Shown here piece after piece: positions 16 to 34,412 of a DNA stretch of 64,000 bases (its first letter is position 1; every line of letters starts with the position of its first letter). The stretch is from IMG/VR virus record IMGVR_UViG_3300023184_000024, positions 124,001 to 188,000 of that record; one strand, given 5' to 3'. The position numbers and the translations under genes were made by a program. The notes beneath the pieces are model-generated. The model was given only the letters and a program-made list of their open reading frames with translations. It had not been told where the DNA came from and made no database searches.

Positions 16-210
16 ATGAAGCACAAGATGATCGTGCCACAACGTAACCCCTTCGTTGTGTTGGCACTAAAACGCAAAGCGGGTAGTCATCGCAAGAGCA
101 ACAAAGCTCTGCGTCGATGCGAAAAATCTAGGGATCGTGGTGAAGCGGTATCACAGCAGACTTTTAATCTGCCAATCCCGAGTTCGAATCTCGGCGGTCC
201 CACCATATAA
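16..210 (+). CDS. small basic protein whose reading frame runs through tRNA-Lys
   Basis: AAGGAG at 4-9, 6 nt before ATG; Lys/Arg-rich first 38 codons; no stop until 208-210, after the tRNA CCA. Confidence 0.55.
   Translation: MKHKMIVPQRNPFVVLALKRKAGSHRKSNKALRRCEKSRDRGEAVSQQTFNLPIPSSNLGGPTI
131..205 (+). tRNA. tRNA-Lys(TTT)
   Basis: cloverleaf, GCAGA-CT TTT AA-TCTGC, TTCGAAT loop, CCA. Confidence 0.95.
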
Positions 211-271
211 AAACACATTGGTGTTGGTTTAACAAATAAGTAAACCTAGTTATAGTGTGTTTCTATATGGT
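202..271 (+). repeat. inverted-repeat stem, copy 1 of AAACACAYT/AGTGTGTTT element
   Basis: ACCATATA-A-AAACACATT pairs with AGTGTGTTT-C-TATATGGT. Confidence 0.7.
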
Positions 272-277
272 AGAGTT

Positions 278-367
278 GGAACGGTCCCATAATGGTATTG
301 GAGCGGATTGCTAATCCGTCGAGTGGTGAAAGCCGCTTTCTGGGTTCAAGTCCCAGTCGTTCCGCCA
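278..367 (+). tRNA. tRNA-Ser(GCT)
   Basis: cloverleaf with long variable arm, anticodon GCT, G73, CCA. Confidence 0.95.
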
Positions 368-374
368 ACATTTT

Positions 375-450
<76 letters not shown>

Positions 451-457
451 AACATAT

Positions 458-533
<76 letters not shown>

Positions 534-541
534 ATTTCTTA

Positions 542-633
542 ACCTCGGTAGTTTAACGGTAAAACAGCGGATTTATATCCCGTGCGCAACAGATAATTGG
601 CCAATGTGGGTTCAACTCCCGCCCGAGGTACCA
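542..633 (+). tRNA. tRNA-Ile(TAT) with atypical 22-nt variable arm
   Basis: ACCTCGG/CCGAGGT acceptor, loop TT TAT AT, T arm GTGGG-TTCAACT-CCCGC, A73, CCA. Confidence 0.85.
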
Positions 634-641
634 TCAAGTTT

Positions 642-715
642 GTATCCATAGTGTAATGGCAGCATCGCGGTCTCCAAAACCGTCAGTCTAGGTTCGAGTC
701 CTAGTGGGTACGCCA
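642..715 (+). tRNA. tRNA-Trp(CCA)
   Basis: GCGGT-CT CCA AA-ACCGT, G73, CCA. Confidence 0.95.
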
Positions 716-731
716 AATAAAGGAGCATAGT

Positions 732-1337
732 ATGCCAGCAGTATTTTTAGTCAGTGATACACACTTCGGACACGCTGGTGTGTGTCGCTTCATGCACCCC
801 GATGATCCTGAAGTAAAATTACGGCCGTGGACTGATCCCGATGAGATGGATGAGGAAATGGTGCGACGATGGAACGACCGTGTGCGACCCAACGACAAGG
901 TCTACCATTTGGGCGATGTTGTCATCAACCGTAAGGCCATGAAAACCTTGCATCGCTTGAATGGTGACAAGGTGTTGATACGCGGCAACCATGACATCTT
1001 CCGTGACGAGGAGTACAGAGAACACTTTCGTGAGTTGCGAGCATACCATGTCATGAACGGAATGATCTTGAGTCATATTCCTGTGCACGAAGCCAGCTTG
1101 GGCAGGTTTGGTACAAACATTCACGGACACTTGCACGCCAGTCGTGTAAAGAAAGTGCGTGGCTACGATGTCGAAACAGGTACCATGTTGTACAGCAACG
1201 AGATTGATCCACGCTACCATTGTGTCTGCGTAGAACAAACCGACTACACGCCCATCTTGTTTGAAGATGTGATCAAACGCATTGAAGCAGAAGGCGGTAG
1301 TGTGGGATTTAAAAACGGCAACGGACCAACTATGTAA
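732..1337 (+). CDS. calcineurin-like metallophosphoesterase
   Basis: SDTHFGH, HLGD, RGNHD, HGHLH motifs; AAGGAG RBS. Confidence 0.9.
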   Translation: MPAVFLVSDTHFGHAGVCRFMHPDDPEVKLRPWTDPDEMDEEMVRRWNDRVRPNDKVYHLGDVVINRKAMKTLHRLNGDKVLIRGNHDIFRDEEYREHFRELRAYHVMNGMILSHIPVHEASLGRFGTNIHGHLHASRVKKVRGYDVETGTMLYSNEIDPRYHCVCVEQTDYTPILFEDVIKRIEAEGGSVGFKNGNGPTM

Positions 1338-1342
1338 TACAT

Positions 1343-1417
1343 CGCGGGGTGGAGAAGTGGTAACTCATCGGGCTCATAACCCGAAGATCGACGGTTCGAA
1401 TCCGTCCCCCGCAACCA
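1343..1417 (+). tRNA. initiator tRNA-fMet(CAT)
   Basis: C1:A72 mismatch, GGG/CCC anticodon stem, CAT, CCA. Confidence 0.95.
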
Positions 1418-1418
1418 A

Positions 1419-1883
1419 TTACTGAGTAATTTGCCCTGTTACAGCATCCACATGCACAGGTTGGCGATCAGCAAATGTAAAATCATAAAAAGGATTGCCT
1501 CGATAATCAACAGTTTGGCGTAATCTACAGAACAACCAAACATTTGTGATACCTGCTTTGGTCATAGCCTGTTGTGCTTGAGCACAACTCAGTGTAGGTG
1601 GATATACAAATGCCTGACACTCAGCCACACGAGAGTCATCAAAAGTGGGACCAGTGGCATTGCCCGTAATGTCAACAGTTATAGCATAAGGCTTGGTATC
1701 TTCGGATCCTTGCCAGCAGGTATACATAGTGCCATTATGGTCAGCCTCAGCAAGATAAAATTTAGATCCGTTTTGATGTAGATCCATAAGGCTTTTGGCT
1801 CCCCAGATCTGTTGATCAAAACTCAAGGGAGACAACAACCTTAGTCGTCGTAAATACTGTTTTATACGTGTTATTATTGACAT
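1419..1883 (-). CDS. hypothetical protein
   Basis: 154-aa ORF with upstream AAAGGA and TAAATA on minus strand; C-terminal VHVDAVTGQI is PepSY-like. Confidence 0.65.
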   Translation of the reverse strand: MSIITRIKQYLRRLRLLSPLSFDQQIWGAKSLMDLHQNGSKFYLAEADHNGTMYTCWQGSEDTKPYAITVDITGNATGPTFDDSRVAECQAFVYPPTLSCAQAQQAMTKAGITNVWLFCRLRQTVDYRGNPFYDFTFADRQPVHVDAVTGQITQ

Positions 1884-1936
1884 AATTACATTTCCTTTTG
1901 TTGATAATACTTATTTAATTAATGTTAAACATCAAT

Positions 1937-2011
1937 GCCTGGTTAGTTCAGCGGTAGAACTCCGTCTTTACACGGCGGCTGTCGGCGGTTCGATCCCGTC
2001 ACCAGGTACCA
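1937..2011 (+). tRNA. tRNA-Val(TAC)
   Basis: CCGTC-TT TAC AC-GGCGG, CCA. Confidence 0.95.
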
Positions 2012-2068
2012 ATTTGACATTTAGCCTAATAGGTTGAATATTTTCAGTACTCAACTGTATAATTGTAT

Positions 2069-2797
2069 ATGTTGAAATATGTGTTATTAACTCTAGCAAT
2101 GATTGCCCCGGCCACAACTGTGGCTGATTGGGAATGGTCAAACAATTTAACTGCCAAAAGTTGGTTGGTTGCAGACGGCAACGGAGTAATACTCCAAAGC
2201 AATAACATCAATGAATCTAGAAGCATTGCCAGCATTACCAAGTTGATGACAGCAATGACTGTGATCGACGCTGGGCAGAACCCAAAAGAAATCATAGGGA
2301 AGTTTACCAGAGCACAGCATATACAGTTGGCTCTTGTTAGATCCAGCAATGAATCTGCTATTGCATTATGCGACAAATATCCTGGCGGGAAACCCAGTTG
2401 TATTAGAGACATGAATCAAAAAGCAATAGCAATGGGCATGCACAACACTAAGTTTGTTGAAGCGTCTGGCCTGAGTCCAATGAACATCAGTACTGCAACT
2501 GATTTATTAGAATTAGTTCTTTCGGCTAGTTATTACCCCGAAATTGTCAAAGCAAGTAAAACTCCACAAATAAAAATTCAAATCAGAAAGCAGTGGCTTT
2601 TCTTTGACAATACCAATCCAATCATCGGCAAACGCCATAATTTCATTGTGAGTAAAACTGGCATAACAAATGCCGCAGGCGGGTGTATTGTAATGATGCT
2701 AGACACCGAAGTCGGAAGGCGTGTTGTTGTTGTGCTCGGAAGCAAGAACGGCCAGACTAGGATACCCGAAGCTGAGTTTATTGCAACTCAGCACTGA
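2069..2797 (+). CDS. D-alanyl-D-alanine carboxypeptidase/endopeptidase (peptidase S11)
   Basis: signal peptide, SITK (SxxK), SSN (SxN), KTG motifs. Confidence 0.9.
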   Translation: MLKYVLLTLAMIAPATTVADWEWSNNLTAKSWLVADGNGVILQSNNINESRSIASITKLMTAMTVIDAGQNPKEIIGKFTRAQHIQLALVRSSNESAIALCDKYPGGKPSCIRDMNQKAIAMGMHNTKFVEASGLSPMNISTATDLLELVLSASYYPEIVKASKTPQIKIQIRKQWLFFDNTNPIIGKRHNFIVSKTGITNAAGGCIVMMLDTEVGRRVVVVLGSKNGQTRIPEAEFIATQH

Positions 2798-2827
2798 TTG
2801 TGTTGTATTTAAACAACACCTATGTGG

Positions 2828-2856
2828 TTGACCAGAAATGCTCATTTTGCTATAAT
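2828..2856 (+). promoter_or_regulatory. sigma70-type promoter P1 of RNA operon
   Basis: TTGACC-17-TATAAT with extended -10 TG. Confidence 0.85.
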
Positions 2857-2925
2857 AGAAACAAGTTAAGAAATTAACTGATGTTGCAAAAGACCCAGGA
2901 AGTTGTAGGGTTTTTGCAAAATGAA

Positions 2926-2954
2926 TTGACCGGTATATGCCATTGTGTTATACT
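2926..2954 (+). promoter_or_regulatory. sigma70-type promoter P2 of RNA operon
   Basis: TTGACC-17-TATACT with extended -10 TG. Confidence 0.8.
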
Positions 2955-2979
2955 AGAGACTAGTTAGAAATTAACTAGA

Positions 2980-2991
2980 TGTTCTTTAAAA
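2980..2991 (+). promoter_or_regulatory. boxA-like antitermination site
   Basis: TGTTCTTTAAAA, right after a hairpin downstream of P2; resembles rrn boxA TGCTCTTTAACA. Confidence 0.7.
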
Positions 2992-3029
2992 AATTATTTT
3001 TCGTATAGTAGTCTCGGACTAGTTCCGGG

Positions 3030-3274
3030 CACTATATGTAAACGCATCGGGTTACCAACCCAGTAGGCAACTTGGCAAGAGACTAATCTGTGGCCGCACA
3101 GACTCTTCCAAGTTACATGAAAGATGGAAACGAAGCCGCAAGGTGGATACTGTACAATCGCGCTGGAACTAGTTGGTCTGTAATGTGTTTGGCAAACAAG
3201 TCCGTGGACGGCACGGTAGGGCAGGTTTAAAACTGCGATCGTTGTCAAACATCCCTATGTGTTTTCATATAGTG
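3030..3274 (+). ncRNA. unidentified structured RNA, about 245 nt (contains copy 2 of the stem element)
   Basis: closing stem CACTATATG-T-AAACGCAT / ATGTGTTT-T-CATATAGTG, with several internal hairpins and GNRA loops. Confidence 0.7.
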
Positions 3275-3280
3275 AATTTT

Positions 3281-3416
3281 TAATGTTGTTAGTTCTGCCT
3301 TCTGTAAGCCCTGGGGGAAACGTCAACCCTGAGTAACTATGTGTATAAACGGTACGTCCGGCCGGCAATTCCGTTGAGCATAGCAAATAGTATAGTTGGC
3401 AGAACTAACAATATTA
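3281..3416 (+). ncRNA. unidentified structured RNA, about 136 nt
   Basis: 19-bp terminal stem 3281-3299/3398-3416, inner CTATG/CATAG and AACGG/CCGTT helices. Confidence 0.6.
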
Positions 3417-3492
3417 GGTCTTAAAGTGTTCATGGACGCACGACGGCTTGTCACGCCGTAAGAGTGGGGATCGTTACCCCCTAAGACCGCCA
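3417..3492 (+). tRNA. tRNA-Asp(GTC)
   Basis: ACGGC-TT GTC AC-GCCGT, G73, CCA; atypical T loop ATCGTTA. Confidence 0.9.
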
Positions 3493-3497
3493 AGTTT

Positions 3498-3569
3498 TGT
3501 GGTAAGGAAAGTAAAAGGAGAATGGGCAAGTTGTTGGCTAGTCAACAACCAGATACCTCACCTGCCACA
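3498..3569 (+). ncRNA. small hairpin RNA candidate
   Basis: TGTGGTA/TGCCACA closing stem, GTTGTTGGC/GTCAACAAC apical stem. Confidence 0.4.
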
Positions 3570-3580
3570 TTTTAATTTTT

Positions 3581-3644
3581 GAGAGCCACATCGCCTGGAT
3601 ACCTCCTCCTCTTAGGAGCACTGGGTCCTGCAACCGTGGCTCTC
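3581..3644 (+). ncRNA. small hairpin RNA candidate with anti-SD-like motif
   Basis: GAGAGCCAC/GTGGCTCTC stem, CTCCT/AGGAG apical stem. Confidence 0.5.
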
Positions 3645-3652
3645 CCTTATTT

Positions 3653-3727
3653 GCTCGATTCGTCTATCGGTTAGGACATGCGGTTTTCATCCGCATAAGA
3701 GCGGTTCGACTCCGCTATCGAGTACCA
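3653..3727 (+). tRNA. tRNA-Glu(TTC)
   Basis: TGCGG-TT TTC AT-CCGCA, CCA. Confidence 0.95.
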
Positions 3728-3732
3728 TACAT

Positions 3733-3817
3733 GGAGATGCCGCCGCAATGGTGTGGCAGGGGACTGTAAATCCTCCGACTTCGGTCACGATAGGTTCGAT
3801 CCCTATCATCTCCACCA
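3733..3817 (+). tRNA. tRNA-Tyr(GTA)
   Basis: GGGGA-CT GTA AA-TCCTC, long variable arm, CCA. Confidence 0.95.
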
Positions 3818-4010
3818 GAACGTTCCGAGTGTCTTCGGATACTGTGACCCGCAGGATGAGAAGTAGTGTGACAACTACGGGTGGTAGTCTTCGAACCTAA
3901 AGGCCGCTGGCAATGCGAGAACTGTCCCTGTCGGGAAGCGGGTGGAAGGTACGTGTGAGGGGTATGATAGCGTCATATCTTTCTGTACTATAATTACCGC
4001 CGGGGGATGC
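3818..4010 (+). ncRNA. unidentified structured, probably pseudoknotted RNA, about 190 nt
   Basis: UUCG-capped hairpin, GTAGT/ACTAC hairpin, 3880-3888/3993-4001 stem, crossing ACCCGC/GCGGGT pairing. Confidence 0.65.
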
Positions 4011-4011
4011 A

Positions 4012-4084
4012 GAGCATATTGAAGCACATTGTGTGTCGGCTTGCTGATAAACTTTAAGTAGAGATAGTGTGTTTCAATATGCTT
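4012..4084 (+). repeat. inverted-repeat stem, copy 3 of AAACACAYT/AGTGTGTTT element
   Basis: GAGCATATTGAAGCACATT pairs with AGTGTGTTTCAATATGCTT. Confidence 0.7.
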
Positions 4085-4089
4085 TTTAT

Positions 4090-4167
4090 GCACAGGTGGC
4101 AGAGTGGTCCAATGCAACGGATTGCAAATCCGTAAAACCGTGAGTTCAAATCTCACCCTGTGTTCCA
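4090..4167 (+). tRNA. tRNA-Cys(GCA)
   Basis: ACGGA-TT GCA AA-TCCGT, U73, CCA. Confidence 0.95.
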
Positions 4168-4175
4168 ATAAGGTT

Positions 4176-4251
4176 GCCTCCATAGCTCAGTTGGTAGAGC
4201 ACTGTGTTGATAACGCAGTGGTCCCTGGTTCGAGTCCAGGTGGCGGCACCA
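4176..4251 (+). tRNA. tRNA-Ile(GAT)
   Basis: CTGTG-TT GAT AA-CGCAG, CCA. Confidence 0.95.
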
Positions 4252-4266
4252 TGTAAGATATAAATT

Positions 4267-4340
4267 GCGGGGTTCGTATAGTGGTAATACCTCAGCCTTC
4301 CAAGCTGATGCGGAGAGTTCGATTCTCTTACCCCGCTCCA
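4267..4340 (+). tRNA. tRNA-Gly(TCC)
   Basis: TCAGC-CT TCC AA-GCTGA, U73, CCA. Confidence 0.95.
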
Positions 4341-4345
4341 TACAC

Positions 4346-4541
4346 CCGGTTACACTTTGACGTCTAAAGTGGGTGGGGCAGTCACCATAGAAAGTGCTGG
4401 GTTTGTAGTGCAACGACCATCCGTACTCTGTCGTGGAGTGGCGGGAACGCATTAGGGGGAGAACACAACTTAAACCCAAAGCGAAAAATGTGTGGACAGA
4501 GTAACAGCTCGGTCCGGGGCCTATGTGGTGTAGGTAGCCGG
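4346..4541 (+). ncRNA. unidentified multi-branched RNA, about 196 nt
   Basis: CCGGTTAC/GTAGCCGG closing stem; CACTTT/AAAGTG, GGTG/CACC, TGGGTTT/AAACCCA, TAGTGC/GCATTA, GGAC/GTCC helices. Confidence 0.7.
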
Positions 4542-4554
4542 ACACTTATAAAAT

Positions 4555-4630
4555 GCGGGATTAGCTCAGTTGGTAGAGCGATACCTTGCCAAGGTATAGG
4601 TCGAGAGTTCGAGCCTCTTATCCCGCTCCA
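4555..4630 (+). tRNA. tRNA-Gly(GCC)
   Basis: ATACC-TT GCC AA-GGTAT, CCA. Confidence 0.95.
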
Positions 4631-5424
4631 TCAAATTCTAAATACTCAAATTCCAATGTTGGTTGTTGTACTGCAATCAGTAGATCGTCAGTGTTGACGA
4701 CTCGCCCCACAACCGGGTGTCCGGTGAATTGTTTTATTTTTTCAATTCCGTGTGTGGCAACAAACTCTGGTGCATGAGTATTGAACCAGTTGATGTAACT
4801 GTTCCAATCAAAATAATTGTCAGTGCCTGTGTTAGTATTGATTACTAGATTAATGCCGGGCTTGACTTGATCATGGAAGCGGCAAGTTTGCATGACGTTG
4901 GTGTCGTCTTGTTGTTCATACAGATACAACGGATGATGCCCTACATGCGGATTTTGCAAACGTATATCACCAAATTCAAGATTGATCTTGGCAGGGTATT
5001 CCAGTGGATCTATTGCAAACATTGTATCGTTGAACCATTCAATCTGCAACCAACTATTACGAAGGCTTCCGCTTTCAAGTGCGTGTAGTGCAAAATGTAG
5101 TTCGTGTAATATGTCATCATGTTCTGCAGGTATGTTTTCAAATCCATTGGCAAGATAAGCTTCAATGTCCTTGTGTAATTTTGTGGTCACTGCAACATTG
5201 TAAGAGTCACGTTGCCAATCCCAACCCAATTCTTGTTTGGCACGATGCACAAGTTTTTCAAAATATTGTATGGTGTATTTTTGAGGATCACGAAAAATAG
5301 CGTGTGGGTCAACGGTCCATTGTTGTTTAATCAAAGATAGATATTTCTTTGCCAAATTTGTATCGTTTAACTTGCAATACAAGGGCGGAATGTTATAAAA
5401 TTTTACAACAAAATCATGAGTCAT
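4618..5424 (-). CDS. hypothetical protein
   Basis: 268-aa ORF, TAAATA just upstream; stop lies within tRNA-Gly 3' end. Confidence 0.75.
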   Translation of the reverse strand: MTHDFVVKFYNIPPLYCKLNDTNLAKKYLSLIKQQWTVDPHAIFRDPQKYTIQYFEKLVHRAKQELGWDWQRDSYNVAVTTKLHKDIEAYLANGFENIPAEHDDILHELHFALHALESGSLRNSWLQIEWFNDTMFAIDPLEYPAKINLEFGDIRLQNPHVGHHPLYLYEQQDDTNVMQTCRFHDQVKPGINLVINTNTGTDNYFDWNSYINWFNTHAPEFVATHGIEKIKQFTGHPVVGRVVNTDDLLIAVQQPTLEFEYLEFDGAG

Positions 5425-5460
5425 TGATTATTTACAAGTTATTTTTGAACCGTTAGTTTT

Positions 5461-5535
5461 CTGGCCATAGTATAATGGATAATACAGCGGCCTTCTAAGC
5501 CGTCAATCTAGGTTCGATTCCTAGTGGCCGGACCA
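5461..5535 (+). tRNA. tRNA-Arg(TCT)
   Basis: GCGGC-CT TCT AA-GCCGT, CCA. Confidence 0.95.
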
Positions 5536-5545
5536 ATTAACCCGT

Positions 5546-5621
5546 GGGGGTGTAGCTCAGTTGGGAGAGCGTTTGCTTTGCAAGCAAAATGTCGCAGGTT
5601 CGATCCCTGTCACCTCCACCA
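5546..5621 (+). tRNA. tRNA-Ala(TGC)
   Basis: G3:U70, TTTGC-TT TGC AA-GCAAA, CCA. Confidence 0.95.
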
Positions 5622-5668
5622 TTTAATAATATTGTCACATTTAAAATGATATATACAGGTATACAACC

Positions 5669-6103
5669 ATGCTACATTTAATCAAAAGCGTCACTGACTC
5701 CTTAATGGACTTTCTCAGTCAAGATCCTGTGCGTCCGCACATTCCCAGATCTGTTAGAGTTGGCAATAATCGAGACATTTTTGTGGCTCGCAAAGACGAT
5801 CAAAGCGTCAAAGCAATAACCTGTGTTAGTTATCAAAACATAATCCCCACTTCCGAAGGTGAATTGTTTGAACTCACCGAGTCTCCAGATGTTGTGGTAT
5901 TTTACACTATCTGGAGTTACGAGCCAGGTGCAGGTCGCGAGTTAATTTTTGAAGCCCGGGATTGGATTCAAAAAAATCGACCCGAAATTAAAAGATTTGT
6001 TACTCTAAGCCCTCCCACAGAAATGGCTCGTCGGTTTCACATCAAGAATGGTGCATTAGTACATCGCATCAATCCCGAAACTGTTAACTACGAGTATCAG
6101 TGA
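5669..6103 (+). CDS. hypothetical protein, GNAT-like fold
   Basis: VFYTIWS..GAGRELI, FVTLSP, ARRFHIKNGA motifs. Confidence 0.6.
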   Translation: MLHLIKSVTDSLMDFLSQDPVRPHIPRSVRVGNNRDIFVARKDDQSVKAITCVSYQNIIPTSEGELFELTESPDVVVFYTIWSYEPGAGRELIFEARDWIQKNRPEIKRFVTLSPPTEMARRFHIKNGALVHRINPETVNYEYQ

Positions 6104-6111
6104 TCCTATAT

Positions 6112-6189
6112 TGGGGTTTCGCCAAGTTGGTCTAAGGCACCGGATTTTGATTCCGGCATCCCTAGGTTCGAATCCTAGAACCCCAGCCA
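6112..6189 (+). tRNA. tRNA-Gln(TTG)
   Basis: U1-A72, CCGGA-TT TTG AT-TCCGG, CCA. Confidence 0.95.
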
Positions 6190-6264
6190 GGTAATGTAGC
6201 ATAATGGTAGTGCACCTCCTTCATACGGAGCAAAGTGCTAGTTCGACTCTAGTCATTACCACCA
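6190..6264 (+). tRNA. tRNA with CAT anticodon (elongator Met, or Ile2)
   Basis: GGTAATG/CATTACC acceptor, loop TT CAT AC, CCA; directly abuts tRNA-Gln. Confidence 0.85.
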
Positions 6265-6269
6265 AAATT

Positions 6270-6346
6270 CGGAGTGTAGCACAGCCCGGTAGTGCGCCTG
6301 CTTTGGGAGCAGGAGGTCCAAGGTTCGAATCCTTGTATTCCGACCA
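6270..6346 (+). tRNA. tRNA-Pro(TGG)
   Basis: C1-G72, CCTGC-TT TGG GA-GCAGG, CCA. Confidence 0.95.
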
Positions 6347-6353
6347 TTTTTAC

Positions 6354-6429
6354 GGAGTTGTTAGTGTAACGGTTAACACCACGGATTGTGATTCCGTTAA
6401 TACGGGTTCGATTCCCGTACGACTCCCCA
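6354..6429 (+). tRNA. tRNA-His(GTG)
   Basis: encoded G-1:C73, ACGGA-TT GTG AT-TCCGT, CCA. Confidence 0.95.
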
Positions 6430-6451
6430 AAGCTCAAGATAAATAATTTAT

Positions 6452-8011
6452 ATGTTTGATAATACTAAACCCAATATTGTAATCTTAACCGACCATACCG
6501 ACCCTTTACTGATGCTCAAGCTGTTTGGTGCCAGTAAAGTTGCCGCAGAATTGCGCATGGCCGGTTTTCAAGTGGCAGTGATTAATCACCTACATCTATT
6601 TACAGTAGAAGAAATTAAAAACATACTAGTACAACTAGTCAGTGATCAAACTGTGTTTGTTGGCACTAGTCCGTTTTTCTATAAAAATATCGAGAATGTG
6701 TTGACTGATCATGAATTTGATCACGAGCAAGGCGGTAAAAAATATGGAACCAAAGAATTAGGCAGTTTTTTGCCACACGGAATCAAGTACAATCAAGAAA
6801 TCAAGCACTTGATCAAAGGAATTAACCCCAACTGTAAGTTTGTCATTGGCGGCCCCGACGCACAAGATCGACAGTACAACAAAGACTACGATTATGTCAT
6901 TGTTGGCTACGGAGACAACAGTGGTCCCAATTTGGCCAGACATTTGGCCTACGGCGAACCTTTGGAAAAATCGCATCGTAGTTTGTACGGACCAGTCATT
7001 GTCGACGATAGATTGGCATCTAATTATAACTTTAATTCGTCGCTGATGAGCTACGAAGATCATGATGCTCTGCTGCCTGGAGAGACCATGCTGACCGAAA
7101 TTGCACGTGGTTGTATTTTCCGCTGTGGCTTTTGCAGTTACCCTCTGAATGGTAAGAAGAAATTAGATCATATTAAATTAGATGACATTCTCTATCAAGA
7201 ATTCATGGACAACTACGAAAAGTACGGTATAACAAGATACATGTTCAGTGATGATACCTACAACGACAGTGTAGATAAAATTAAGATGATGCATGCAGTC
7301 AGTAAACGTTTGCCATTTCAACTTGAATACTGGGCTTGCTTGCGTTTAGATTTACTAGGAGCACACCCCGAAACAATCGATTTGCTGTATGAAAGCGGTC
7401 TTCGTGCCATGATGTTTGGCATCGAAACACTGCATGAAAAAGCCAGTAAGATTATTGGCAAGGGCGGCAGTCGAGCCAAGCAAATTGCCACCATCAATTA
7501 CATCAAAGAAAAGTACGGCAACAATGTAATGATGCACGGGTCCTTTATATTTGGACTTCCTGAAGAGCCAATAGAGTCTATGTTGGACACAGCTGATCGA
7601 TTGGTGTCAGGAGAAATCAAACTTGACTCCTGGGCCATTCATGCATTTAGATTACAACACAAAGGTATGAGTTATACCAGCGAGTTTGATTTGAATCCTG
7701 AAAAGTATGGATACGAACCATACGATAATACATTAGGCGGCAATCGCCTAATTTGGAAAAACAAGTTTACCAACTTTTACGAGTGCGAGAAACTGGCACA
7801 AGAAACACTCAAGCGCGGCGCCATTAAACTAAAACTTAACAAAATTGCCGGTGTAACCAGTATGTTTATTGCAGGGCTGGGTTTTGATTTACAGTACTCG
7901 GCTAATAAAAACGTTGTAGACTTTGACTGGCATCAAATTGATTTGGCCAAACAACGACGCAGTGCAGAATACAAAGAATTGTTGTACAAACAACTCAACA
8001 TTCAACCATAA
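6452..8011 (+). CDS. B12-binding-type radical SAM protein
   Basis: ARGCIFRCGFC (CxxxCxxC), VIGGP, FSDDT, FGIET, FIFGLP motifs. Confidence 0.85.
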   Translation: MFDNTKPNIVILTDHTDPLLMLKLFGASKVAAELRMAGFQVAVINHLHLFTVEEIKNILVQLVSDQTVFVGTSPFFYKNIENVLTDHEFDHEQGGKKYGTKELGSFLPHGIKYNQEIKHLIKGINPNCKFVIGGPDAQDRQYNKDYDYVIVGYGDNSGPNLARHLAYGEPLEKSHRSLYGPVIVDDRLASNYNFNSSLMSYEDHDALLPGETMLTEIARGCIFRCGFCSYPLNGKKKLDHIKLDDILYQEFMDNYEKYGITRYMFSDDTYNDSVDKIKMMHAVSKRLPFQLEYWACLRLDLLGAHPETIDLLYESGLRAMMFGIETLHEKASKIIGKGGSRAKQIATINYIKEKYGNNVMMHGSFIFGLPEEPIESMLDTADRLVSGEIKLDSWAIHAFRLQHKGMSYTSEFDLNPEKYGYEPYDNTLGGNRLIWKNKFTNFYECEKLAQETLKRGAIKLKLNKIAGVTSMFIAGLGFDLQYSANKNVVDFDWHQIDLAKQRRSAEYKELLYKQLNIQP

Positions 8012-8014
8012 TCG

Positions 8015-8043
8015 TTGACTGCTGACTCAACATCTGTTATAAT
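8015..8043 (+). promoter_or_regulatory. sigma70-type promoter
   Basis: TTGACT-17-TATAAT with TG extension, upstream of tRNA-Leu. Confidence 0.85.
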
Positions 8044-8054
8044 ACAATAATTAA

Positions 8055-8131
8055 GCCCAGGTGATGGAATTGGTATACGTGTTGGTCTTAGAAGCCAAAT
8101 TTTGCGAGTTCGAGTCTCGCCCTGGGCACCA
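8055..8131 (+). tRNA. tRNA-Leu(TAG), short variable loop
   Basis: TTGGT-CT TAG AA-GCCAA, only 5-nt variable region, A73, CCA. Confidence 0.9.
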
Positions 8132-8139
8132 ATAAATGT

Positions 8140-8225
8140 GCGACTGTGGTGAAATAGGTAGACACAAAAGACTTAAAATCTTTCGCTGTAATGGCATGCC
8201 GGTTCGATTCCGGCCAGTCGCACCA
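8140..8225 (+). tRNA. tRNA-Leu(TAA)
   Basis: AAAGA-CT TAA AA-TCTTT, long variable arm, CCA. Confidence 0.95.
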
Positions 8226-8229
8226 ATAT

Positions 8230-8303
8230 GCTCCTGTAGTATAATGGTAATACACGCCCTTGGTAAGGGCGAGCCACAAGTTCAATTCTTGTCTGGAGCA
8301 CCA
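8230..8303 (+). tRNA. tRNA-Thr(GGT)
   Basis: CGCCC-TT GGT AA-GGGCG, CCA. Confidence 0.95.
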
Positions 8304-8307
8304 TATT

Positions 8308-8457
8308 ATGAAACTGTTCGAAGCAACAATAAAAATTAACGGTCGAGAATTCAAAGATCGTGTGGGCGCAAATAATGCCGAAGAAGCACGATTGCTTTTA
8401 CAACAACGTCATGGGCCTAGGGCAGTGCCTTATTTGCCCAAAATGATACCAAGTTAA
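8308..8457 (+). CDS. small hypothetical protein (49 aa)
   Basis: MKLFEATIKING... exactly fills the gap between two tRNAs. Confidence 0.6.
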   Translation: MKLFEATIKINGREFKDRVGANNAEEARLLLQQRHGPRAVPYLPKMIPS

Positions 8458-8459
8458 CA

Positions 8460-8549
8460 GGAAGCGTGGTCGAGTCTGGTTTATGGCAACAGTCTTGAAA
8501 ACTGTCGACTCGCAAGGGTCCGTGAGTTCGAATCTCACCGCTTCCACCA
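8460..8549 (+). tRNA. tRNA-Ser(TGA)
   Basis: ACAGT-CT TGA AA-ACTGT, long variable arm, CCA. Confidence 0.95.
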
Positions 8550-8564
8550 ATATGGAGTATTACT

Positions 8565-8864
8565 ATGTCAAACGAAAACGATAAATTCAACCATAGCAAG
8601 CGTTTGCTCAAAGATGACAATGCAGTCAACAAGCAGGTTAAAATTGCTAAATCACATGGGTTGACCAACAAGGACAAGGCAGTAAAAGAGCCACATCGTT
8701 TGGCCAAACATCATGCCATGGACTGTGGCCGTCCTGGGTGTATGCTATGTGGTAACCCACGCAAAACGTTTAAAGAACTCACTGCTCAGGAAAAACGACT
8801 GTATCAAGATGTTGACAATCCACCATCTAAGCATACAAACGGTACTTTGCCTCCTGAAGAATAA
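8565..8864 (+). CDS. basic hypothetical protein with Cys cluster
   Basis: GGAG RBS; CGRPGCMLCGNPR putative zinc-binding motif. Confidence 0.75.
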   Translation: MSNENDKFNHSKRLLKDDNAVNKQVKIAKSHGLTNKDKAVKEPHRLAKHHAMDCGRPGCMLCGNPRKTFKELTAQEKRLYQDVDNPPSKHTNGTLPPEE

Positions 8865-8867
8865 TAT

Positions 8868-8943
8868 GCCGCGGTAGCTCATCAGGTAGAGCAGCAGACT
8901 GAAAATCTGTGTGTGGCTGGTTCGAGTCCAGCTCGTGGCACCA
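8868..8943 (+). tRNA. tRNA-Phe(GAA)
   Basis: GCAGA-CT GAA AA-TCTGT, CCA. Confidence 0.95.
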
Positions 8944-8947
8944 ACAA

Positions 8948-9022
8948 CGGTCCTTAGTTCAATGGATAGAATGCTTGGCTTCGAACCAAGCGGTGTGGGT
9001 TCGATTCCTGCAGGACCGGCCA
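8948..9022 (+). tRNA. tRNA-Arg(TCG)
   Basis: CTTGG-CT TCG AA-CCAAG, CCA. Confidence 0.92.
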
Positions 9023-9764: not shown

Positions 9765-10435
9765 TCAAACACGTATTTTTATTTTTTATTCCTGGGAGTG
9801 CCGGGAATTTTGTTTCAAGGTGTTTGAACTTGGTTGATGAGAATTGCCATTGTTGGGCAACCGAAGAACAAGCAGTTAGGTCACTGCCGATGACTCAAAG
9901 ACAAGACTTGCTGTGTTATACAGAACAAAAACAATATAAAAAATGGACGGACTTTGAACATCGACTTGAATTACACACTCGTCGATTTTTGCTAACAGAC
10001 CTGCCAGATAACTCAGTCAGTATTTGGCCAACCCACCCTGACTATGCTGTGCTCGATCGTGGCATTGCCGGCGGTGATGATCAATCATTTGTGTTTTACA
10101 TCGACCCCAGTGATAACATGGATTGGGTTGTGTTAAATGCGCTGTACAAAGACAGTTTTATCAATCGACGATGGTTAGAAATTGGAGAAAAGATGAGATT
10201 AGATTCAGAAATCAATAAAATTAACTTGACTAGCATCATCAATGGTGCTACAATATGTTGTAATGAGATTCAACGTATCTGCGACTTAATTGGCCAACCT
10301 TTTTCTGACCAAGCTAGATCAAGGATAATTGACCTTTGGCAACAGTGGCATAACACTACTTTGGCAAAAGATCGATTTGCTGAATTTCAAAAACAAATCG
10401 GGTTTAACCTAAGGAGTAATCATGTCCAAACTTAA
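9761..10435 (+). CDS. hypothetical protein
   Basis: 224-aa ORF coupled by ATGA overlap; N-terminal PGSAGN loop. Confidence 0.7.
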   Translation: MIKHVFLFFIPGSAGNFVSRCLNLVDENCHCWATEEQAVRSLPMTQRQDLLCYTEQKQYKKWTDFEHRLELHTRRFLLTDLPDNSVSIWPTHPDYAVLDRGIAGGDDQSFVFYIDPSDNMDWVVLNALYKDSFINRRWLEIGEKMRLDSEINKINLTSIINGATICCNEIQRICDLIGQPFSDQARSRIIDLWQQWHNTTLAKDRFAEFQKQIGFNLRSNHVQT

Positions 10436-10892
10436 CTTAGAAGAAGTTAAACGTTTCATTCAGGCCCAAGGTCCAGATACTAAAATTTATCTAGGTGCTG
10501 ACAGCGAGCGTTTTAAACTTGATAAAGTATGGTGGGCAGAATACACTGTGGCCATTGTGGTACACATCAACGGCAAGAATGGTTGTAAGATTTTTGGTGA
10601 GATATCCAAGGAACGTGACTATGATCAACGTGCAGACCGACCAAGCATGCGTTTAATGAACGAAGTTTATCGTGTCAGTGAAATGTTTCAACGCTTACAA
10701 GAAGCATTGGTTGACCGCAGTGTGGAAGTACATTTGGACATTAACCCCAATGAAATGCATGGATCGAGTTGTGTAATTCAACAGGCCATTGGATATATTC
10801 GCGGAACTTGCAATGTGATTCCAATGGTCAAACCCGATGCATTTGCCGCAAGCTACGCCGCAGATCGGTTGCGTAGTTTAAAAGTTGCTTAA
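10422..10892 (+). CDS. RNase H-like protein, YkuK/DUF458 family
   Basis: IYLGADS, EVHLDIN, KPDAFAASYAAD motifs; AAGGAG RBS. Confidence 0.8.
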   Translation: MSKLNLEEVKRFIQAQGPDTKIYLGADSERFKLDKVWWAEYTVAIVVHINGKNGCKIFGEISKERDYDQRADRPSMRLMNEVYRVSEMFQRLQEALVDRSVEVHLDINPNEMHGSSCVIQQAIGYIRGTCNVIPMVKPDAFAASYAADRLRSLKVA

Positions 10893-10905
10893 CTTGGAGA
10901 AAAAA

Positions 10906-11142
10906 ATGGCAAGAATTGTCAGTGAAGATGCTGTAAAAGCAGTGGAGAATCGATTCGATTTAGTTTTAATTGCGTCAAGACGAGTTCGAGAACTTCGTAA
11001 TGGATGGCAAAGGAAAGTAGACAGCGACAACGGTGATTTAGTCACTGCATTGCGTGAAATAGAGCAAGGATTGGTTGGTAGAGATTACTTACTTAAGCCC
11101 ACTGACATTGATCGGCGCAGGAAAAAAACTTCAGAGAAGTAA
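10906..11142 (+). CDS. rpoZ: RNA polymerase omega subunit homologue
   Basis: MARI..EDA...VENRFDLVLIASRR.REL, VTALREI signature. Confidence 0.9.
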   Translation: MARIVSEDAVKAVENRFDLVLIASRRVRELRNGWQRKVDSDNGDLVTALREIEQGLVGRDYLLKPTDIDRRRKKTSEK

Positions 11143-12117: not shown

Positions 12118-12756
12118 TTGCCGGTACATTTAATCAATCCACTGCCGATATATCAAGAAGAGTCTGGCTATACTTTGTCAGACTCTGAATTATCGATACT
12201 CAACAATATCAAATATAACTCAGTGAGCAAGCCGTTTATCTGGGAATATGCATCAGAGTATACAATATTAGATCACCCTGGACTGGCAGATCTAAAGGCT
12301 GTATTACAACAGCACTTGGATAGGTATCGCAAAGAAATATGTGGTGTGGTTGATCAAGAGTTTTATATTACCAACAGTTGGTTAAGTAAAATCGAAGCTA
12401 TCCAAGGTAACTTATCTGAACATTCGCACGACAACAGTTTAATCAGTGGTGTGTTTTACATTGATGTCCCGCCCGACACTCCTTTGTGTTTTCGTAATCA
12501 TAGTCAGATTTTTAAAAAACATGATTTTTATTTTTCAAACAGTGTTGATACACAATACCGACAAGAAACATATTGTGTACCAGTAAAATCTGGAGACATT
12601 GTGCTATTCCCAAGTTGGGTAGATCATTACGTTGAAAAAAATCAAACAAGTCATGTTCGAAGAAGTTTGGCATTTGATAGTTTTGTTCGAGGGCTGTTTG
12701 ATGGTAAAATGTTGCACAACGATAAAACTGGTTTTAGTACGCTAATGATTAAATAA
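12118..12756 (+). CDS. putative 2OG-Fe(II) oxygenase (TIGR02466-like)
   Basis: HSH.NS.ISGVFY, GDIVLFPSWVDHYV, RRSLAF motifs. Confidence 0.8.
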   Translation: MPVHLINPLPIYQEESGYTLSDSELSILNNIKYNSVSKPFIWEYASEYTILDHPGLADLKAVLQQHLDRYRKEICGVVDQEFYITNSWLSKIEAIQGNLSEHSHDNSLISGVFYIDVPPDTPLCFRNHSQIFKKHDFYFSNSVDTQYRQETYCVPVKSGDIVLFPSWVDHYVEKNQTSHVRRSLAFDSFVRGLFDGKMLHNDKTGFSTLMIK

Positions 12757-12760
12757 AAGT

Positions 12761-13083
12761 TAAGACTGTATGAAGTAGAGAGAAAAGGATTCAAGACGCG
12801 GGGGCAGTGCCCGCCAGGTCCACCAAAAACACACTGCCAGTCGCGCTGGTTGTATGGTACTATTCTAGAAATAAGGTTCGAATCCTTAGTGTGTTTTTGA
12901 TGGGCCTGACACAGGATCGATTGGGTCAAGAGTATTGAAATGGACAGTCCGGCAATGTAGAAGCCGTTAGGGTTGGGGGAACTCGGCCGAAGACACAAAA
13001 ACCGTAAATGCAAACGACGAACAGTTCGCTTTAGCCGCCTAAACTCGGCTTAGGGTAGGAAATACCTCGTAACAGAAACCACC
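12761..13083 (+). ncRNA. ssrA: two-piece (circularly permuted) tmRNA
   Basis: acceptor piece ends ...GCGGG-GGCAGTG-CCCGC-CAGGTCC-ACCA (12825) before the coding piece starting GGGCCTG (12902); G3:U70; tag ANDEQFALAA* at 13010-13042; 5' end approximate. Confidence 0.92.
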
Positions 13084-13107
13084 AGCCCGCTTCGGCGGGC
13101 TTTTTTT
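13084..13107 (+). terminator. intrinsic terminator
   Basis: AGCCCGC-TTCG-GCGGGCT followed by a T run. Confidence 0.9.
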
Positions 13108-13120
13108 CTTGGAGTAAACT

Positions 13121-34314: not shown

Positions 34315-34412
34315 TTGTAGATAAATGGGTCTCGTTTGCGTAGTTCTTTGATTTTTCGACGATATTTAATTTCTAAAACTATTCTATTGTAAATTCTTAA
34401 AATCCATTTCAT
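34311..34412 (-). CDS. 33-aa peptide MKWILRIYNRIVLEIKYRRKIKELRKRDPFIYK
   Basis: ATGA-coupled on both sides; below the ORF track cutoff. Confidence 0.7.
   Translation of the reverse strand: MKWILRIYNRIVLEIKYRRKIKELRKRDPFIYK

What the first reader, a model, noticed from the sequence alone, without database searches (positions are those of the whole stretch)
4346..4541. Multi-branched ~196-nt RNA between the two tRNA-Gly genes
Closing stem CCGGTTAC/GTAGCCGG encloses at least five helices. One hairpin has a GGCAGT loop like the tmRNA T-loop at about 12803. A GTAACA loop motif recurs at 13069 and 19584. Extra pairings ACGAC/GTCGT and ACACA/TGTGT are possible. Processing of the flanking tRNAs would release it as a discrete RNA.
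Basis: partly seen in the sequence, partly recalled or inferred. Interest (0 to 1): 0.68.

Follow-up and report, generated by a model that had tools for sequence, protein, structure and literature searches.

The report
New pseudoknot-chain RNA in phage tRNA arrays
The 200-base gap between the two tRNA-Gly genes is a real gene for a small, very tightly knotted RNA that occurs in well over a hundred uncultured freshwater giant phages, always inside their tRNA gene clusters; it matches no described RNA family and its job is unknown.

Summary
The spacer at window 4342-4545 (+) is a conserved non-coding RNA gene, not junk and not a known family. It has no Rfam match even at E<=10, and its single-sequence folding energy is ordinary (z = -0.47). 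A 26-nt motif from its 3' part finds at least 119 viral contigs and at least 120 metagenome contigs. It finds only 2 chance hits in 185,579 prokaryote genomes and none in GenBank phages. In almost all loci the element lies in a tRNA array, on the tRNA strand. It usually sits flush: about 150 nt from the upstream tRNA to the motif, and about 58 nt from the motif to the next tRNA. The supported fold is four consecutive H-type pseudoknots followed by an invariant 3' module. The hairpin loop of that module pairs with the RNA's own 5' end, which closes the chain. Family-wide, 93.5% of modelled helix cells pair, against 32-50% in slid controls. Pseudoknot stems left out of the model pair at 70-79%, against 23-55%. 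Function is inferred only: a processed, nuclease-resistant trans-acting scaffold or decoy, analogous to GOLLD, ROOL or the tmRNA pseudoknot ring.

The parts
4342..4545 (+). Whole RNA gene (about 204 nt), lying between tRNA-Gly(tcc) 4267-4340 and tRNA-Gly(gcc) 4555-4630.
   Evidence: CM R1 scores it at 208.7 bits, full length. tRNAs are. Family lengths are 187-218 nt, median 201.
4343..4346 (+). 5'-terminal CACC. It pairs with GGUG 4527-4530 in the H8 loop, a long-range pseudoknot that closes the chain.
   Evidence: The 5' end and the loop covary across the family (ACC/GGU, UCC/GGA, CCUCG/CGAGG, CACUA/UAGUG, CACUAC/GUGGUG and others). Mean helix score is 10.1 against 8.85 +/- 0.19 for 500 partner permutations, maximum 9.47.
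4347..4371 (+). Pseudoknot 1. S1 is 4347-4350 (CGGU) with 4359-4362 (GACG; one G-A mismatch in this copy). S2 is 4353-4358 (CACUUU) with 4366-4371 (AAAGUG).
   Evidence: S2 pairs in 94.7% of cells and all 6 pairs show double changes. S1 was not in the model: 71% paired against 34-55% when slid. Examples are CGCAG/CUGCG, CAGAG/CUCUG and CAGU/ACUG.
4372..4398 (+). Pseudoknot 2. Hairpin H2 is 4372-4376 with 4382-4386. Its loop GGCA 4377-4380 pairs with UGCU 4395-4398. The linker is AUAGAAAG 4387-4394.
   Evidence: H2 pairs in 87% of cells with double changes. The loop pairing was not in the model: 79% against 27-47% when slid. Examples are UGGC/GCCA, UAGC/GCUA, GAC/GUC and GAA/UUC.
4400..4454 (+). 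Pseudoknot 3 with an inserted hairpin. H3 is 4400-4402 with 4416-4418. Loop UAGUGC 4406-4411 pairs with GCAUUA 4449-4454. Hairpin H4 is 4421-4429 with 4435-4444.
   Evidence: H3 pairs in 98% of cells and H4 in 82-93%. The loop pairing was not in the model: 70% against 29-44% when slid, with 110 double-change cells. Within the window's own cluster it is 100% paired with 4 double-change pairs.
4455..4493 (+). Pseudoknot 4. Hairpin H5 is 4455-4461 with 4469-4476. The linker is A-rich.
   Evidence: H5 pairs in 90-93% of cells. The loop pairing was not in the model: 70% against 23-51% when slid, with 92 double-change cells. Variants are UAACA/UGUUA, AUCAC/GUGAU, CUGGC/GUCAG and UCCCU/AGGGA.
4494..4511 (+). 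Invariant core GGACAG followed by a hairpin with loop GUAACA 4501-4506. Positions 4500 and 4507 are always unlike purines.
   Evidence: The core is present in every family member, including second copies found by the model alone. For 4500/4507 the counts are A..G 50 and G..A 54 of 104, mutual information 1.0 bit. This favours a purine-purine pair closing a GUAACN hexaloop.
4512..4543 (+). 3' stem P7 is 4512-4517 with 4538-4543. It encloses the internal loop GG 4518-4519 / UAG 4535-4537 and hairpin H8, which is 4520-4523 with 4531-4534 and has loop 4524-4530.
   Evidence: P7 pairs in 96% of cells and 5 of its 6 pairs show double changes. H8 pairs in 93.5% and all 4 pairs show double changes.
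2828..2856 (+). Promoter-like site (TTGACC-17-TATAAT with TG) that could drive the tRNA-Asp to tRNA-Gly(gcc) unit containing the RNA.
   Evidence: Consensus scan, 11 of 12 matches. It is a pattern match only.
4712..4735 (+). Terminator-like hairpin plus T-run just after tRNA-Gly(gcc).
   Evidence: Consensus scan. It is a pattern match only.

Best explanation
Window 4342-4545 (+) encodes a stable non-coding RNA of about 200 nt. It belongs to a phage-specific family that no library describes, carried in the tRNA gene arrays of uncultured freshwater jumbo phages. Their large terminase is 55-74% identical to this phage's, and this phage's is about 54% identical to that of Pseudomonas phage PA5oct.

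Shown: the family exists, and it sits on the tRNA strand, mostly flush between two tRNA genes. Its fold is conserved by covariation. The fold is four consecutive H-type pseudoknots, then an invariant module: GGACAG, a GUAACN loop closed by a purine-purine pair, and a stem with a GG/UAG internal loop. The terminal hairpin loop of that module pairs with the RNA's own 5' end.

Inferred: the RNA is co-transcribed with the tRNAs. RNase P cutting at the next tRNA frees its 3' side, and endonuclease or exonuclease trimming after the previous tRNA's encoded CCA frees its 5' side. With both ends buried it resists nucleases. It then acts in trans as a rigid scaffold or decoy that presents the invariant 3' module to a conserved partner, most plausibly part of the translation or tRNA machinery, or it assembles with itself. 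The partner and the function are not shown. The confidence given is for the statement as a whole: about 0.9 for the gene, family and fold, about 0.3 for the trans-acting scaffold or decoy function.
For: Context:
- The genome is a 352,754-bp phage with direct terminal repeats.
- The window holds 27 tRNAs and a permuted tmRNA.

Family:
- nhmmer found weak homologues.
- A 26-nt motif finds at least 119 viral contigs and at least 120 metagenome contigs.
- The covariance model finds 105 matches in 98 sources.

Placement:
- The upstream tRNA lies mostly 135-172 nt before the motif and the next tRNA 53-66 nt after it. Both are on the same strand, and the flanking tRNAs differ between phages.

Structure:
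- In the window's own cluster, aligned by sequence only, 93.6% of cells pair against 38-44% when slid, and 25 pairs show double changes.
- Family-wide, 93.5% pair against 32-50%, with 872 double-change cells against 254 +/- 14 in shuffles.
- Pseudoknot stems left out of the model pair at 70-79% against 23-55%.
- The 5' end and the H8 loop covary.
- G-U cells outnumber A-C cells 291 to 116, which supports the + strand.

Other:
- No frame is open; there are about 4 stops per + frame.
- In four metatranscriptome runs, contigs of relatives cover 4366-4456. Summed depth is up to about 695 in X18, while the neighbouring protein gene 4713-5419 has zero depth.
- No promoter-like site lies directly upstream. 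The nearest are a promoter-like site at 2828-2856 and a terminator-like site at 4712-4725.
Against: - No end mapping and no raw reads were available. The RNA-library evidence is Logan contigs from relatives at 85% likeness or more. It cannot show ends, strand or level, and DNA carry-over is not excluded.
- The window's copy has a G-A mismatch in stem S1 and two G-A mismatches in H5.
- A close relative with 24 tRNAs (G002, 95% complete) lacks the RNA, so it is dispensable.
- No protein gene is consistently linked to it.
- The trans-acting function is argued only from architecture and context.
Confidence: 0.6

Rival explanations
1. One reading: a multi-branched RNA of about 196 nt, closed by the stem CCGGTTAC/GTAGCCGG and enclosing five or more helices, with an extra ACGAC/GTCGT pairing.
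For: Both octamers are present and complementary in this one sequence. The inner part, UUAC with GUAG, is conserved in sequence in many members.
Against: The outer pairs pair in only 42% and 20% of homologues, and no pair shows compensatory change. The 3' strand covaries with 4512-4517 instead, at 96% paired. ACGAC/GTCGT pairs in 40% of cells. The MFE is not better than shuffles.
Confidence: 0.04
2. A cis-acting element of the tRNA operon: a structured spacer that guides or insulates processing, blocks exonucleases or RNase E, or protects the long untranslated transcript. On this view it has no role as a free RNA.
For: It always lies inside tRNA arrays on the same strand. Its compact fold with buried ends would stop exonucleases (inference). 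It is dispensable in a relative.
Against: - An invariant 20-nt module and a five-pseudoknot fold are far more than a spacer or barrier needs.
- There is one copy per array, at variable positions, between different tRNAs.
- A few members lie in contigs with no tRNA nearby (L187, L238, L245, L275).
- Contigs of relatives in RNA libraries cover the element.
Confidence: 0.15
3. An RNA-only assembly. The 5'-end/loop pairing would be intermolecular, so that molecules join head to tail into rings or cages.
For: The pairing of 3-7 bp between the 5' end and the H8 loop covaries, and covariation cannot tell cis from trans. ROOL and GOLLD are phage RNAs encoded near tRNA islands that form homo-oligomeric cages (PMC12286853). 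No partner protein was found.
Against: No direct evidence. An intramolecular closure is sterically simpler for a 200-nt chain. The RNA is far smaller than ROOL or GOLLD.
Confidence: 0.12
4. A ribozyme, either self-processing or acting on the tRNA precursors.
For: It has a dense pseudoknotted fold with a strictly invariant, partly single-stranded core, and it lies among RNAs that need processing.
Against: There is no match to any ribozyme family in Rfam at E<=10. The flanking tRNAs already supply processing sites. No conserved cleavage-site signature was identified.
Confidence: 0.08
5. An anti-defence decoy: an RNA mimic that soaks up a host RNA-targeting defence protein, like the pseudo-ToxI RNAs of phages that neutralise type III toxins or tRNA-directed nucleases.
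For: Type III antitoxins are pseudoknot RNAs and phages are known to mimic them (PMC5772629 and PMC5086642, listed). The arrays also carry phosphoesterase, phosphatase and kinase genes that look like RNA-repair functions.
Against: There are no tandem repeats. The four pseudoknots differ in sequence. No toxin-like gene is nearby. The invariant core is shared by phages whose terminases are only 55% identical, which argues for a very conserved target.
Confidence: 0.1
6. A non-functional spacer or a decayed remnant of tRNA genes.
For: The single-sequence folding energy is ordinary. The element is absent from one relative.
Against: There are more than 100 homologues with compensatory changes in every helix, an invariant core, no tRNA-like match, and presence in RNA libraries.
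Confidence: 0.01

Closest known systems
tmRNA (its pseudoknot string PK1-PK4)
   Same: Both have a chain of H-type pseudoknots closed into a loop by long-range pairing of the ends. Both are encoded beside tRNA genes and matured by tRNA-processing enzymes. This phage also carries a two-piece tmRNA 8 kb downstream.
   Different: It has no tRNA-like acceptor/T-arm domain, no CCA end, and no tag reading frame. It gives no hit to any tmRNA model at E<=10. It is about 200 nt rather than 300-400 nt.
GOLLD and ROOL RNAs (ornate phage RNAs near tRNA islands)
   Same: All are phage-encoded, lie in or beside tRNA arrays, are highly pseudoknotted and have no known function or protein partner (PMC12286853).
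   Different: No Rfam hit to either family. It is 200 nt, against about 580 nt and over 800 nt. The secondary structure is unrelated. Oligomerisation has not been tested.
Phage T4 stable RNAs C and D (species 1 and 2) in the T4 tRNA cluster (from my own knowledge)
   Same: These are small stable RNAs of unknown function, co-transcribed with phage tRNAs and released by tRNA processing.
   Different: No sequence similarity to any GenBank phage record outside the tRNAs. The T4 RNAs are shorter and are not known to be pseudoknot chains.
phi29 pRNA (from my own knowledge)
   Same: A phage RNA of similar size in which a short covarying loop pairing of about 4 bp joins parts that are far apart. In pRNA that pairing is between molecules.
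   Different: The phage type and genomic context are different, and there is no sequence or fold similarity. It has not been tested whether the pairing here is between molecules.
ToxI-type antitoxin RNAs of type III toxin-antitoxin systems
   Same: Both are built from pseudoknots, and phages are known to encode mimics.
   Different: ToxI is a tandem array of identical 34-36-nt repeats next to a toxin gene. Here there are no repeats and no toxin gene.

Membership tests
Any Rfam 15 family (4227 models, including tmRNA, RNase P, 6S, Y RNA/YrlA, GOLLD, ROOL, raiA, skipping-rope and ribozymes) | A covariance-model match at the gathering score. | tested here: not met
   Nothing in 4341-4554 at the gathering score. 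At E<=10 there are only the truncated flanking tRNAs and one chance lncRNA hit on the minus strand.
tmRNA | A tRNA-like domain: acceptor stem formed by the 5' and 3' ends, a T-arm and a CCA end. | tested here: not met
   ARAGORN and Rfam find the phage's tmRNA at 12733-13133 and none here. The 3' end after P7 is ACAC, with no acceptor stem.
tmRNA | A tag-peptide reading frame with a resume codon. | tested here: not met
   There are about 4 stops in each + frame across 97 members, and the median longest ATG-to-stop ORF is 20 aa.
tmRNA | A string of H-type pseudoknots. | tested here: met
   There are four consecutive pseudoknots with covariation.
GOLLD / ROOL | Homology to the curated models, and a size of 500-800 nt or more. 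| tested here: not met
   No hit. Length is 187-218 nt.
GOLLD / ROOL | Phage-encoded and located at tRNA islands. | tested here: met
   The description of the family is in PMC12286853.
GOLLD / ROOL | Forms a homo-oligomeric RNA-only cage. | not testable with these tools
   This needs biophysics or cryo-EM.
Y RNA (Ro/Rsr partner) | A long terminal stem formed by the 5' and 3' ends that carries the Ro-binding site. | tested here: not met
   The proposed terminal stem fails covariation. The ends are joined only by a 3-7-bp pairing between the 5' end and a loop.
Y RNA (Ro/Rsr partner) | A linked Ro/TROVE protein gene. | tested here: not met
   PF05731 is absent from the complete genome, while the control genomes did match. 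A DUF2828/DUF7788 protein lies in 12 of 119 arrays. It is absent from G000, and PF25043 (DUF7788) found nothing in the RNA-bearing genomes G006-G008.
Type III antitoxin (ToxI-like) or phage pseudo-ToxI | Tandem direct repeats of about 34-36 nt, each forming a pseudoknot. | tested here: not met
   Tandem Repeats Finder finds none in 4300-4600 at score 30 or more.
T4 RNA C / RNA D | Sequence homology to the T4-type genes. | tested here: not met
   blastn of 3900-5000 and of the 3' module against 50,697 phage records matches only the tRNAs, or nothing.
Hammerhead or other small self-cleaving ribozymes | A conserved catalytic core. | tested here: not met
   No hit at E<=10. A hammerhead core lies 3' of two relatives, outside the element.

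The most novel reading that the evidence does not exclude
The family is a new class of self-organising phage RNA. It would be a closed ring of five pseudoknots whose 5'-end/loop pairing can also form between molecules, giving head-to-tail rings or cages. Alternatively the ring would clamp a ribosomal or tRNA-processing component, as the tmRNA pseudoknot ring does. Either way it would be a small third member, alongside GOLLD and ROOL, of the RNA-only machines that giant phages encode in their tRNA islands.
Probability: 0.15. Interest if true: 0.88.

Novelty: new variant of a known kind. Interest (0 to 1): 0.72.

Why it matters
Phage tRNA islands already hide two of the most elaborate natural RNAs known, GOLLD and ROOL, and their function is still open. 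This would be a third, unrelated family in the same niche, and it is much smaller. At about 200 nt it is small enough for crystallography, cryo-EM with scaffolds, full mutate-and-rescue, and synthesis.

Five pseudoknots in 200 nt, with both ends buried and a 20-nt invariant core, is an unusual density of tertiary structure. The family is abundant in lake metagenomes and appears in metatranscriptomes. It therefore offers a tractable way to ask what structured RNAs in phage tRNA arrays actually do. It also shows that the 'spacers' in such arrays should be annotated as genes.

Tried and rejected
1. Single-sequence folding gave z = -0.47 on the + strand and -0.34 on the - strand, so it is uninformative.
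2. Relatives were sought through the neighbouring 268-aa gene. Its homologues are not near tRNAs and show no RNA homologue. That gene is an insert here.
3. The radical-SAM gene gave no relatives.
4. The exact pattern of tRNA-Gly end, a 199-229 nt gap, then tRNA-Gly start found no hits.
5. BLAST of the spacer against five large related contigs found nothing. G002's array lacks the element.
6. RNase P, 6S, SRP, Y RNA, T-box and ribozyme ideas were considered from motifs I remembered (GAAAG, ACAGA, UGG loops). None has Rfam support and the covariation-based fold does not fit any of them.
7. I noted a likeness of the GUAACN hairpin and what follows it to 23S rRNA helix 44 of the GTPase centre. This is from memory only and was not tested. 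It is a lead, not a finding.
8. Partner-protein search: ORFs in 119 loci were clustered.
   - The commonest neighbours are a Metallophos phosphoesterase (41 loci), an Rpb6-like protein (29), a DSP phosphatase (27), an RNaseH-like protein (24) and DUF2828/DUF7788 (12).
   - None is universal.
   - DUF2828/DUF7788 is absent from the complete G000.
   - PF25043 (DUF7788) also found nothing in RNA-bearing G006-G008; PF11443 (DUF2828) was not searched there.
   - It has no PDB relative by sequence, and TROVE is absent.
9. Only 9 loci include a tmRNA within the fetched stretch, so a link to tmRNA cannot be judged.
10. The hammerhead next to L249 and L214 is a type I ribozyme that cuts about 85 nt downstream. 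It serves the next element rather than trimming this RNA.
11. Five cultured jumbo phages (PA5oct, Atu_ph07, Phosso, Vibrio 2.275.O, fHe-Yen9-04) gave no model hit.
12. Literature: two full-text searches and four papers describe no such family. It may be one of the 8,495 unnamed IMG/VR candidates of PMC10690425, which I could not check.

Full report
WHAT IS THERE. The window is bases 124001-188000 of a 352,754-bp virus record with direct terminal repeats. Its large terminase is about 54% identical to that of Pseudomonas phage PA5oct and 51-53% identical to those of the Sinorhizobium and Agrobacterium jumbo phages. Bases 131-9022 hold 27 tRNA genes, all on the + strand, and a permuted tmRNA lies at 12733-13133. 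The finding is the 214-nt gap between tRNA-Gly(tcc) 4267-4340 and tRNA-Gly(gcc) 4555-4630.

IS THE FOLD MORE THAN CHANCE ON ITS OWN? No. The minimum free energy of the + strand is -64.9 kcal/mol, against -62.7 +/- 4.7 for dinucleotide shuffles (z = -0.47). The minus strand is similar. Rfam 15 has no match at the gathering score, and none at E<=10 apart from the cut-off flanking tRNAs. The case therefore rests on comparison with other sequences.

FINDING RELATIVES. Searches through the neighbouring protein genes, and BLAST of the spacer against related large contigs, failed at first. Loci fetched through the nearby D-Ala-D-Ala carboxypeptidase gene contained weak but full-length nhmmer matches (E 4e-6 to 0.05). 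All were inside tRNA arrays on the tRNA strand, but between different tRNAs.

Their shared 3' block gave the pattern GGACAGRGTAACNNCTCNNNNNGGGG.
- It has at least 120 in JGI metagenome contigs.
- It has only two in one genome each of 185,579 prokaryote species. Neither of those matches the covariance model or lies near a tRNA.
- GenBank phages give no blastn match to the 3' module.
- The model finds nothing in the five nearest cultured jumbo phages.
- Runs that hold the window's DNA are lake and freshwater metagenomes.
- Large contigs that carry the RNA have terminases 55-74% identical to this phage's.
- One close relative with 24 tRNAs (G002, 95% complete) lacks the RNA.

PLACEMENT. In 125 matches, the distance from the end of the upstream tRNA to the motif is mostly 135-172 nt. 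The distance from the motif to the next tRNA is mostly 53-66 nt. Both tRNAs are on the same strand. The unit is therefore about 200 nt (median 201, range 187-218) and fits between tRNA genes with spacers of a few bases. The flanking tRNAs differ from phage to phage, so the element moves as a module, as a tRNA gene does. Eight loci carry two diverged copies.

THE FOLD. The twelve distinct sequences of the window's own subgroup were aligned by MAFFT without any structural input (A1). On that alignment my model of 63 pairs is 93.6% paired, against 38-44% when the 3' partners are slid. Twenty-five pairs change on both sides, against 11 +/- 2 in shuffles.

I then built a covariance model from the nested helices only (R1). 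It aligned 105 matches from all subgroups (A2).
- The modelled helices are 93.5% paired, against 32-50% when slid.
- They hold 872 double-change cells, against 254 +/- 14 in shuffles.
- This alignment was fitted to the modelled helices, so it leans towards them.
- The four pseudoknot stems were deliberately left out of the model, so they are an independent test.
- Those stems pair in 71%, 79%, 70% and 70% of cells, against 23-55% at any slide from -4 to +4.
- They hold 31-110 double-change cells, against 7-59.

A fifth long-range pairing joins the first bases of the RNA to the loop of the last hairpin. In the window this is CACC 4343-4346 with GGUG 4527-4530. Elsewhere it appears as UCCC/GGGA, CCUCG/CGAGG, CACUA/UAGUG, CACUAC/GUGGUG and others. 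The best-helix score averages 10.1, against 8.85 +/- 0.19 when partners are permuted (maximum of 500 permutations 9.47).

The result is a chain:
- the 5' end;
- pseudoknot 1 (4347-4371);
- pseudoknot 2 (4372-4398);
- pseudoknot 3 with an inserted hairpin (4400-4454);
- pseudoknot 4 (4455-4493);
- the invariant GGACAG and a hairpin with loop GUAACA (4494-4510);
- stem 4512-4517/4538-4543, which encloses a GG/UAG internal loop and the hairpin whose loop returns to the 5' end.

Positions 4500 and 4507 are A..G in 50 members and G..A in 54 of 104, and never anything else. This points to a direct purine-purine pair closing a six-base loop. G-U cells outnumber A-C cells 291 to 116, as expected if the + strand is the RNA.

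- The closing stem CCGGTTAC/GTAGCCGG is not supported. Its two outer pairs are paired in 42% and 20% of members. Its 3' strand covaries with 4512-4517 instead. Its inner pairs are merely two conserved strings without compensatory change.
- ACGAC/GTCGT is at chance, 40%.
- ACACA/TGTGT is right; it is the second stem of pseudoknot 4.
- The GGCAG loop does look like the odd T-loop GGCAGTG of this phage's tmRNA. In other subgroups, however, the loop differs and covaries with 4395-4398, so it is a pseudoknot strand and not a T-loop.
- GTAACA occurs 34 times in the window, against 49 +/- 7 expected.

EXPRESSION AND PROCESSING. The nearest strong promoter-like site on the + strand is at 2828-2856. 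A terminator-like hairpin follows tRNA-Gly(gcc) at 4712-4725, and nothing promoter-like lies just upstream of the RNA (pattern matches only). Both flanking tRNAs encode CCA.

Contigs from four metatranscriptome runs were laid at 85% likeness or more.
- They cover part of the element. One 176-nt contig spans 4366-4456 with 11 differences.
- Summed depth at 4399 and 4414 is about 695 in run X18 and 47-82 in X15.
- The protein gene at 4713-5419 has zero depth in all four runs.
- These are assembled contigs of relatives. They show presence in RNA libraries, but not ends, strand or level, and DNA carry-over cannot be excluded.

Release by RNase P and 3'-end trimming is therefore an inference from the flush placement between tRNAs. 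It is not a result.

WHAT IT IS NOT.
- Not coding: there are about 4 stops per frame.
- Not a repeat array: no tandem repeats.
- Not a tmRNA: it has no tRNA-like domain and no tag frame.
- Not a Y RNA: it has no terminal stem, and no TROVE gene is in the complete genome although the control genomes matched.
- Not GOLLD or ROOL: there is no model match and it is a third or a quarter of their size.
- No neighbouring protein family is universal. The most suggestive was a DUF2828/DUF7788 protein that ends 7-12 nt before the RNA in two loci. It is missing from the complete G000, and a PF25043 (DUF7788) search found nothing in three RNA-bearing genomes, G006 and G007 nearly complete and G008 86%.

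HOW IT MOST LIKELY WORKS. The shown facts are these: a conserved chain of pseudoknots with both termini tied in, a strictly invariant 3' module, phage-only distribution, residence in tRNA arrays, and dispensability in some relatives.

The reading I commit to, with modest confidence, is as follows. The RNA is cut out of the tRNA precursor. Its buried ends make it long-lived. It acts in trans as a rigid scaffold that presents the invariant module to a highly conserved partner, most plausibly something in the translation or tRNA-handling machinery, given its company and the tmRNA-like ring of pseudoknots.

The rivals, in order, are:
- a cis-acting processing or stability element;
- an RNA-only oligomer built by trans 5'-end/loop pairing, as in pRNA or ROOL;
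- an anti-defence decoy;
- a ribozyme.

None can be separated with these tools.

NOVELTY. There is no Rfam family, no match in GenBank phages, and no description in the papers I could search. It may sit unnamed in a bulk catalogue of IMG/VR candidates (PMC10690425), which I could not check. The kind, an ornate RNA of unknown function in phage tRNA islands, is known. This family and its five-pseudoknot architecture are new to that kind.

Noticed in passing
window 3818-4025 (+), between tRNA-Tyr and tRNA-Cys: This looks like a second conserved spacer RNA of about 200 nt. It is 86% identical to G002 (L091:5848-6290). nhmmer finds it in 22 loci with E down to 2e-52. It has no Rfam match. Short metatranscriptome contigs cover it at the highest summed depth of the whole 3-kb stretch, up to about 12,000 in X18. 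Its single-sequence fold is not exceptional, z = -0.23.
   Followed up: partly
window 2826-3281 (+): A non-coding-looking stretch just downstream of the strongest promoter-like site (2828-2856) is 78.6% identical to G002's array (L091:5303-5768). It may be a leader or a further RNA.
   Followed up: no
L249:8330-8430 and L214:668-775: A type I hammerhead sits directly 3' of two divergent family members. It has the core CUGAUGAG...CGAAAC, a long stem III and a GUA cleavage triplet, followed by AGGAU pairing back to AUCCU. Rfam Hammerhead_3 scores it at only 23 bits. It would cut about 85 nt downstream and so free the 5' end of the next element.
   Followed up: partly
L251, L180, L285, L208, L220, L263, L172, L288; L306:1029-1302: Some phage contigs carry two diverged copies of the family, one of each main subtype. 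One metagenome contig has two motif matches only 248 nt apart.
   Followed up: partly
window 720-1337, 5669-6103, 10422-11097, and many related loci: The tRNA arrays repeatedly carry the same small accessory genes: a calcineurin-like phosphoesterase, a DSP-type phosphatase, an AAA_33 kinase, an RNaseH-like protein (PF04308) and an Rpb6/omega-like protein. The kinase and phosphatase set looks like RNA end-healing functions.
   Followed up: partly
L175:1361-2938 and L288 (original-strand coordinates not computed; ORF at 7552-8970 with the RNA read on the + strand): A DUF2828/DUF7788 protein, with a vWA domain in some relatives and automatically named 'RNA-binding protein' in the ESM Atlas, ends 7-12 nt before the RNA in two loci. 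It lies in 12 of 119 arrays. It is absent from this phage.
   Followed up: partly
window 12801-12826 and 12874-12890: The two-piece tmRNA has an unusual T-loop (GGCAGTG) before its GGTCCACCA end. A canonical T-arm-like AAGGTTCGAATCCTT lies about 60 nt further on, inside the region that ARAGORN calls tmRNA.
   Followed up: no
window 542-633: tRNA-Ile(tat) is 92 nt long, as long as a class II tRNA. A 92-nt tRNA-Ile(tat) also occurs in L164:7766-7857.
   Followed up: no
window 32836-44693 (-) and 51068-63865 (-): There is a run of paralogous radical-SAM-like genes with a Nol-type carbamoyltransferase, and a single open reading frame of 4,265 aa.
   Followed up: no
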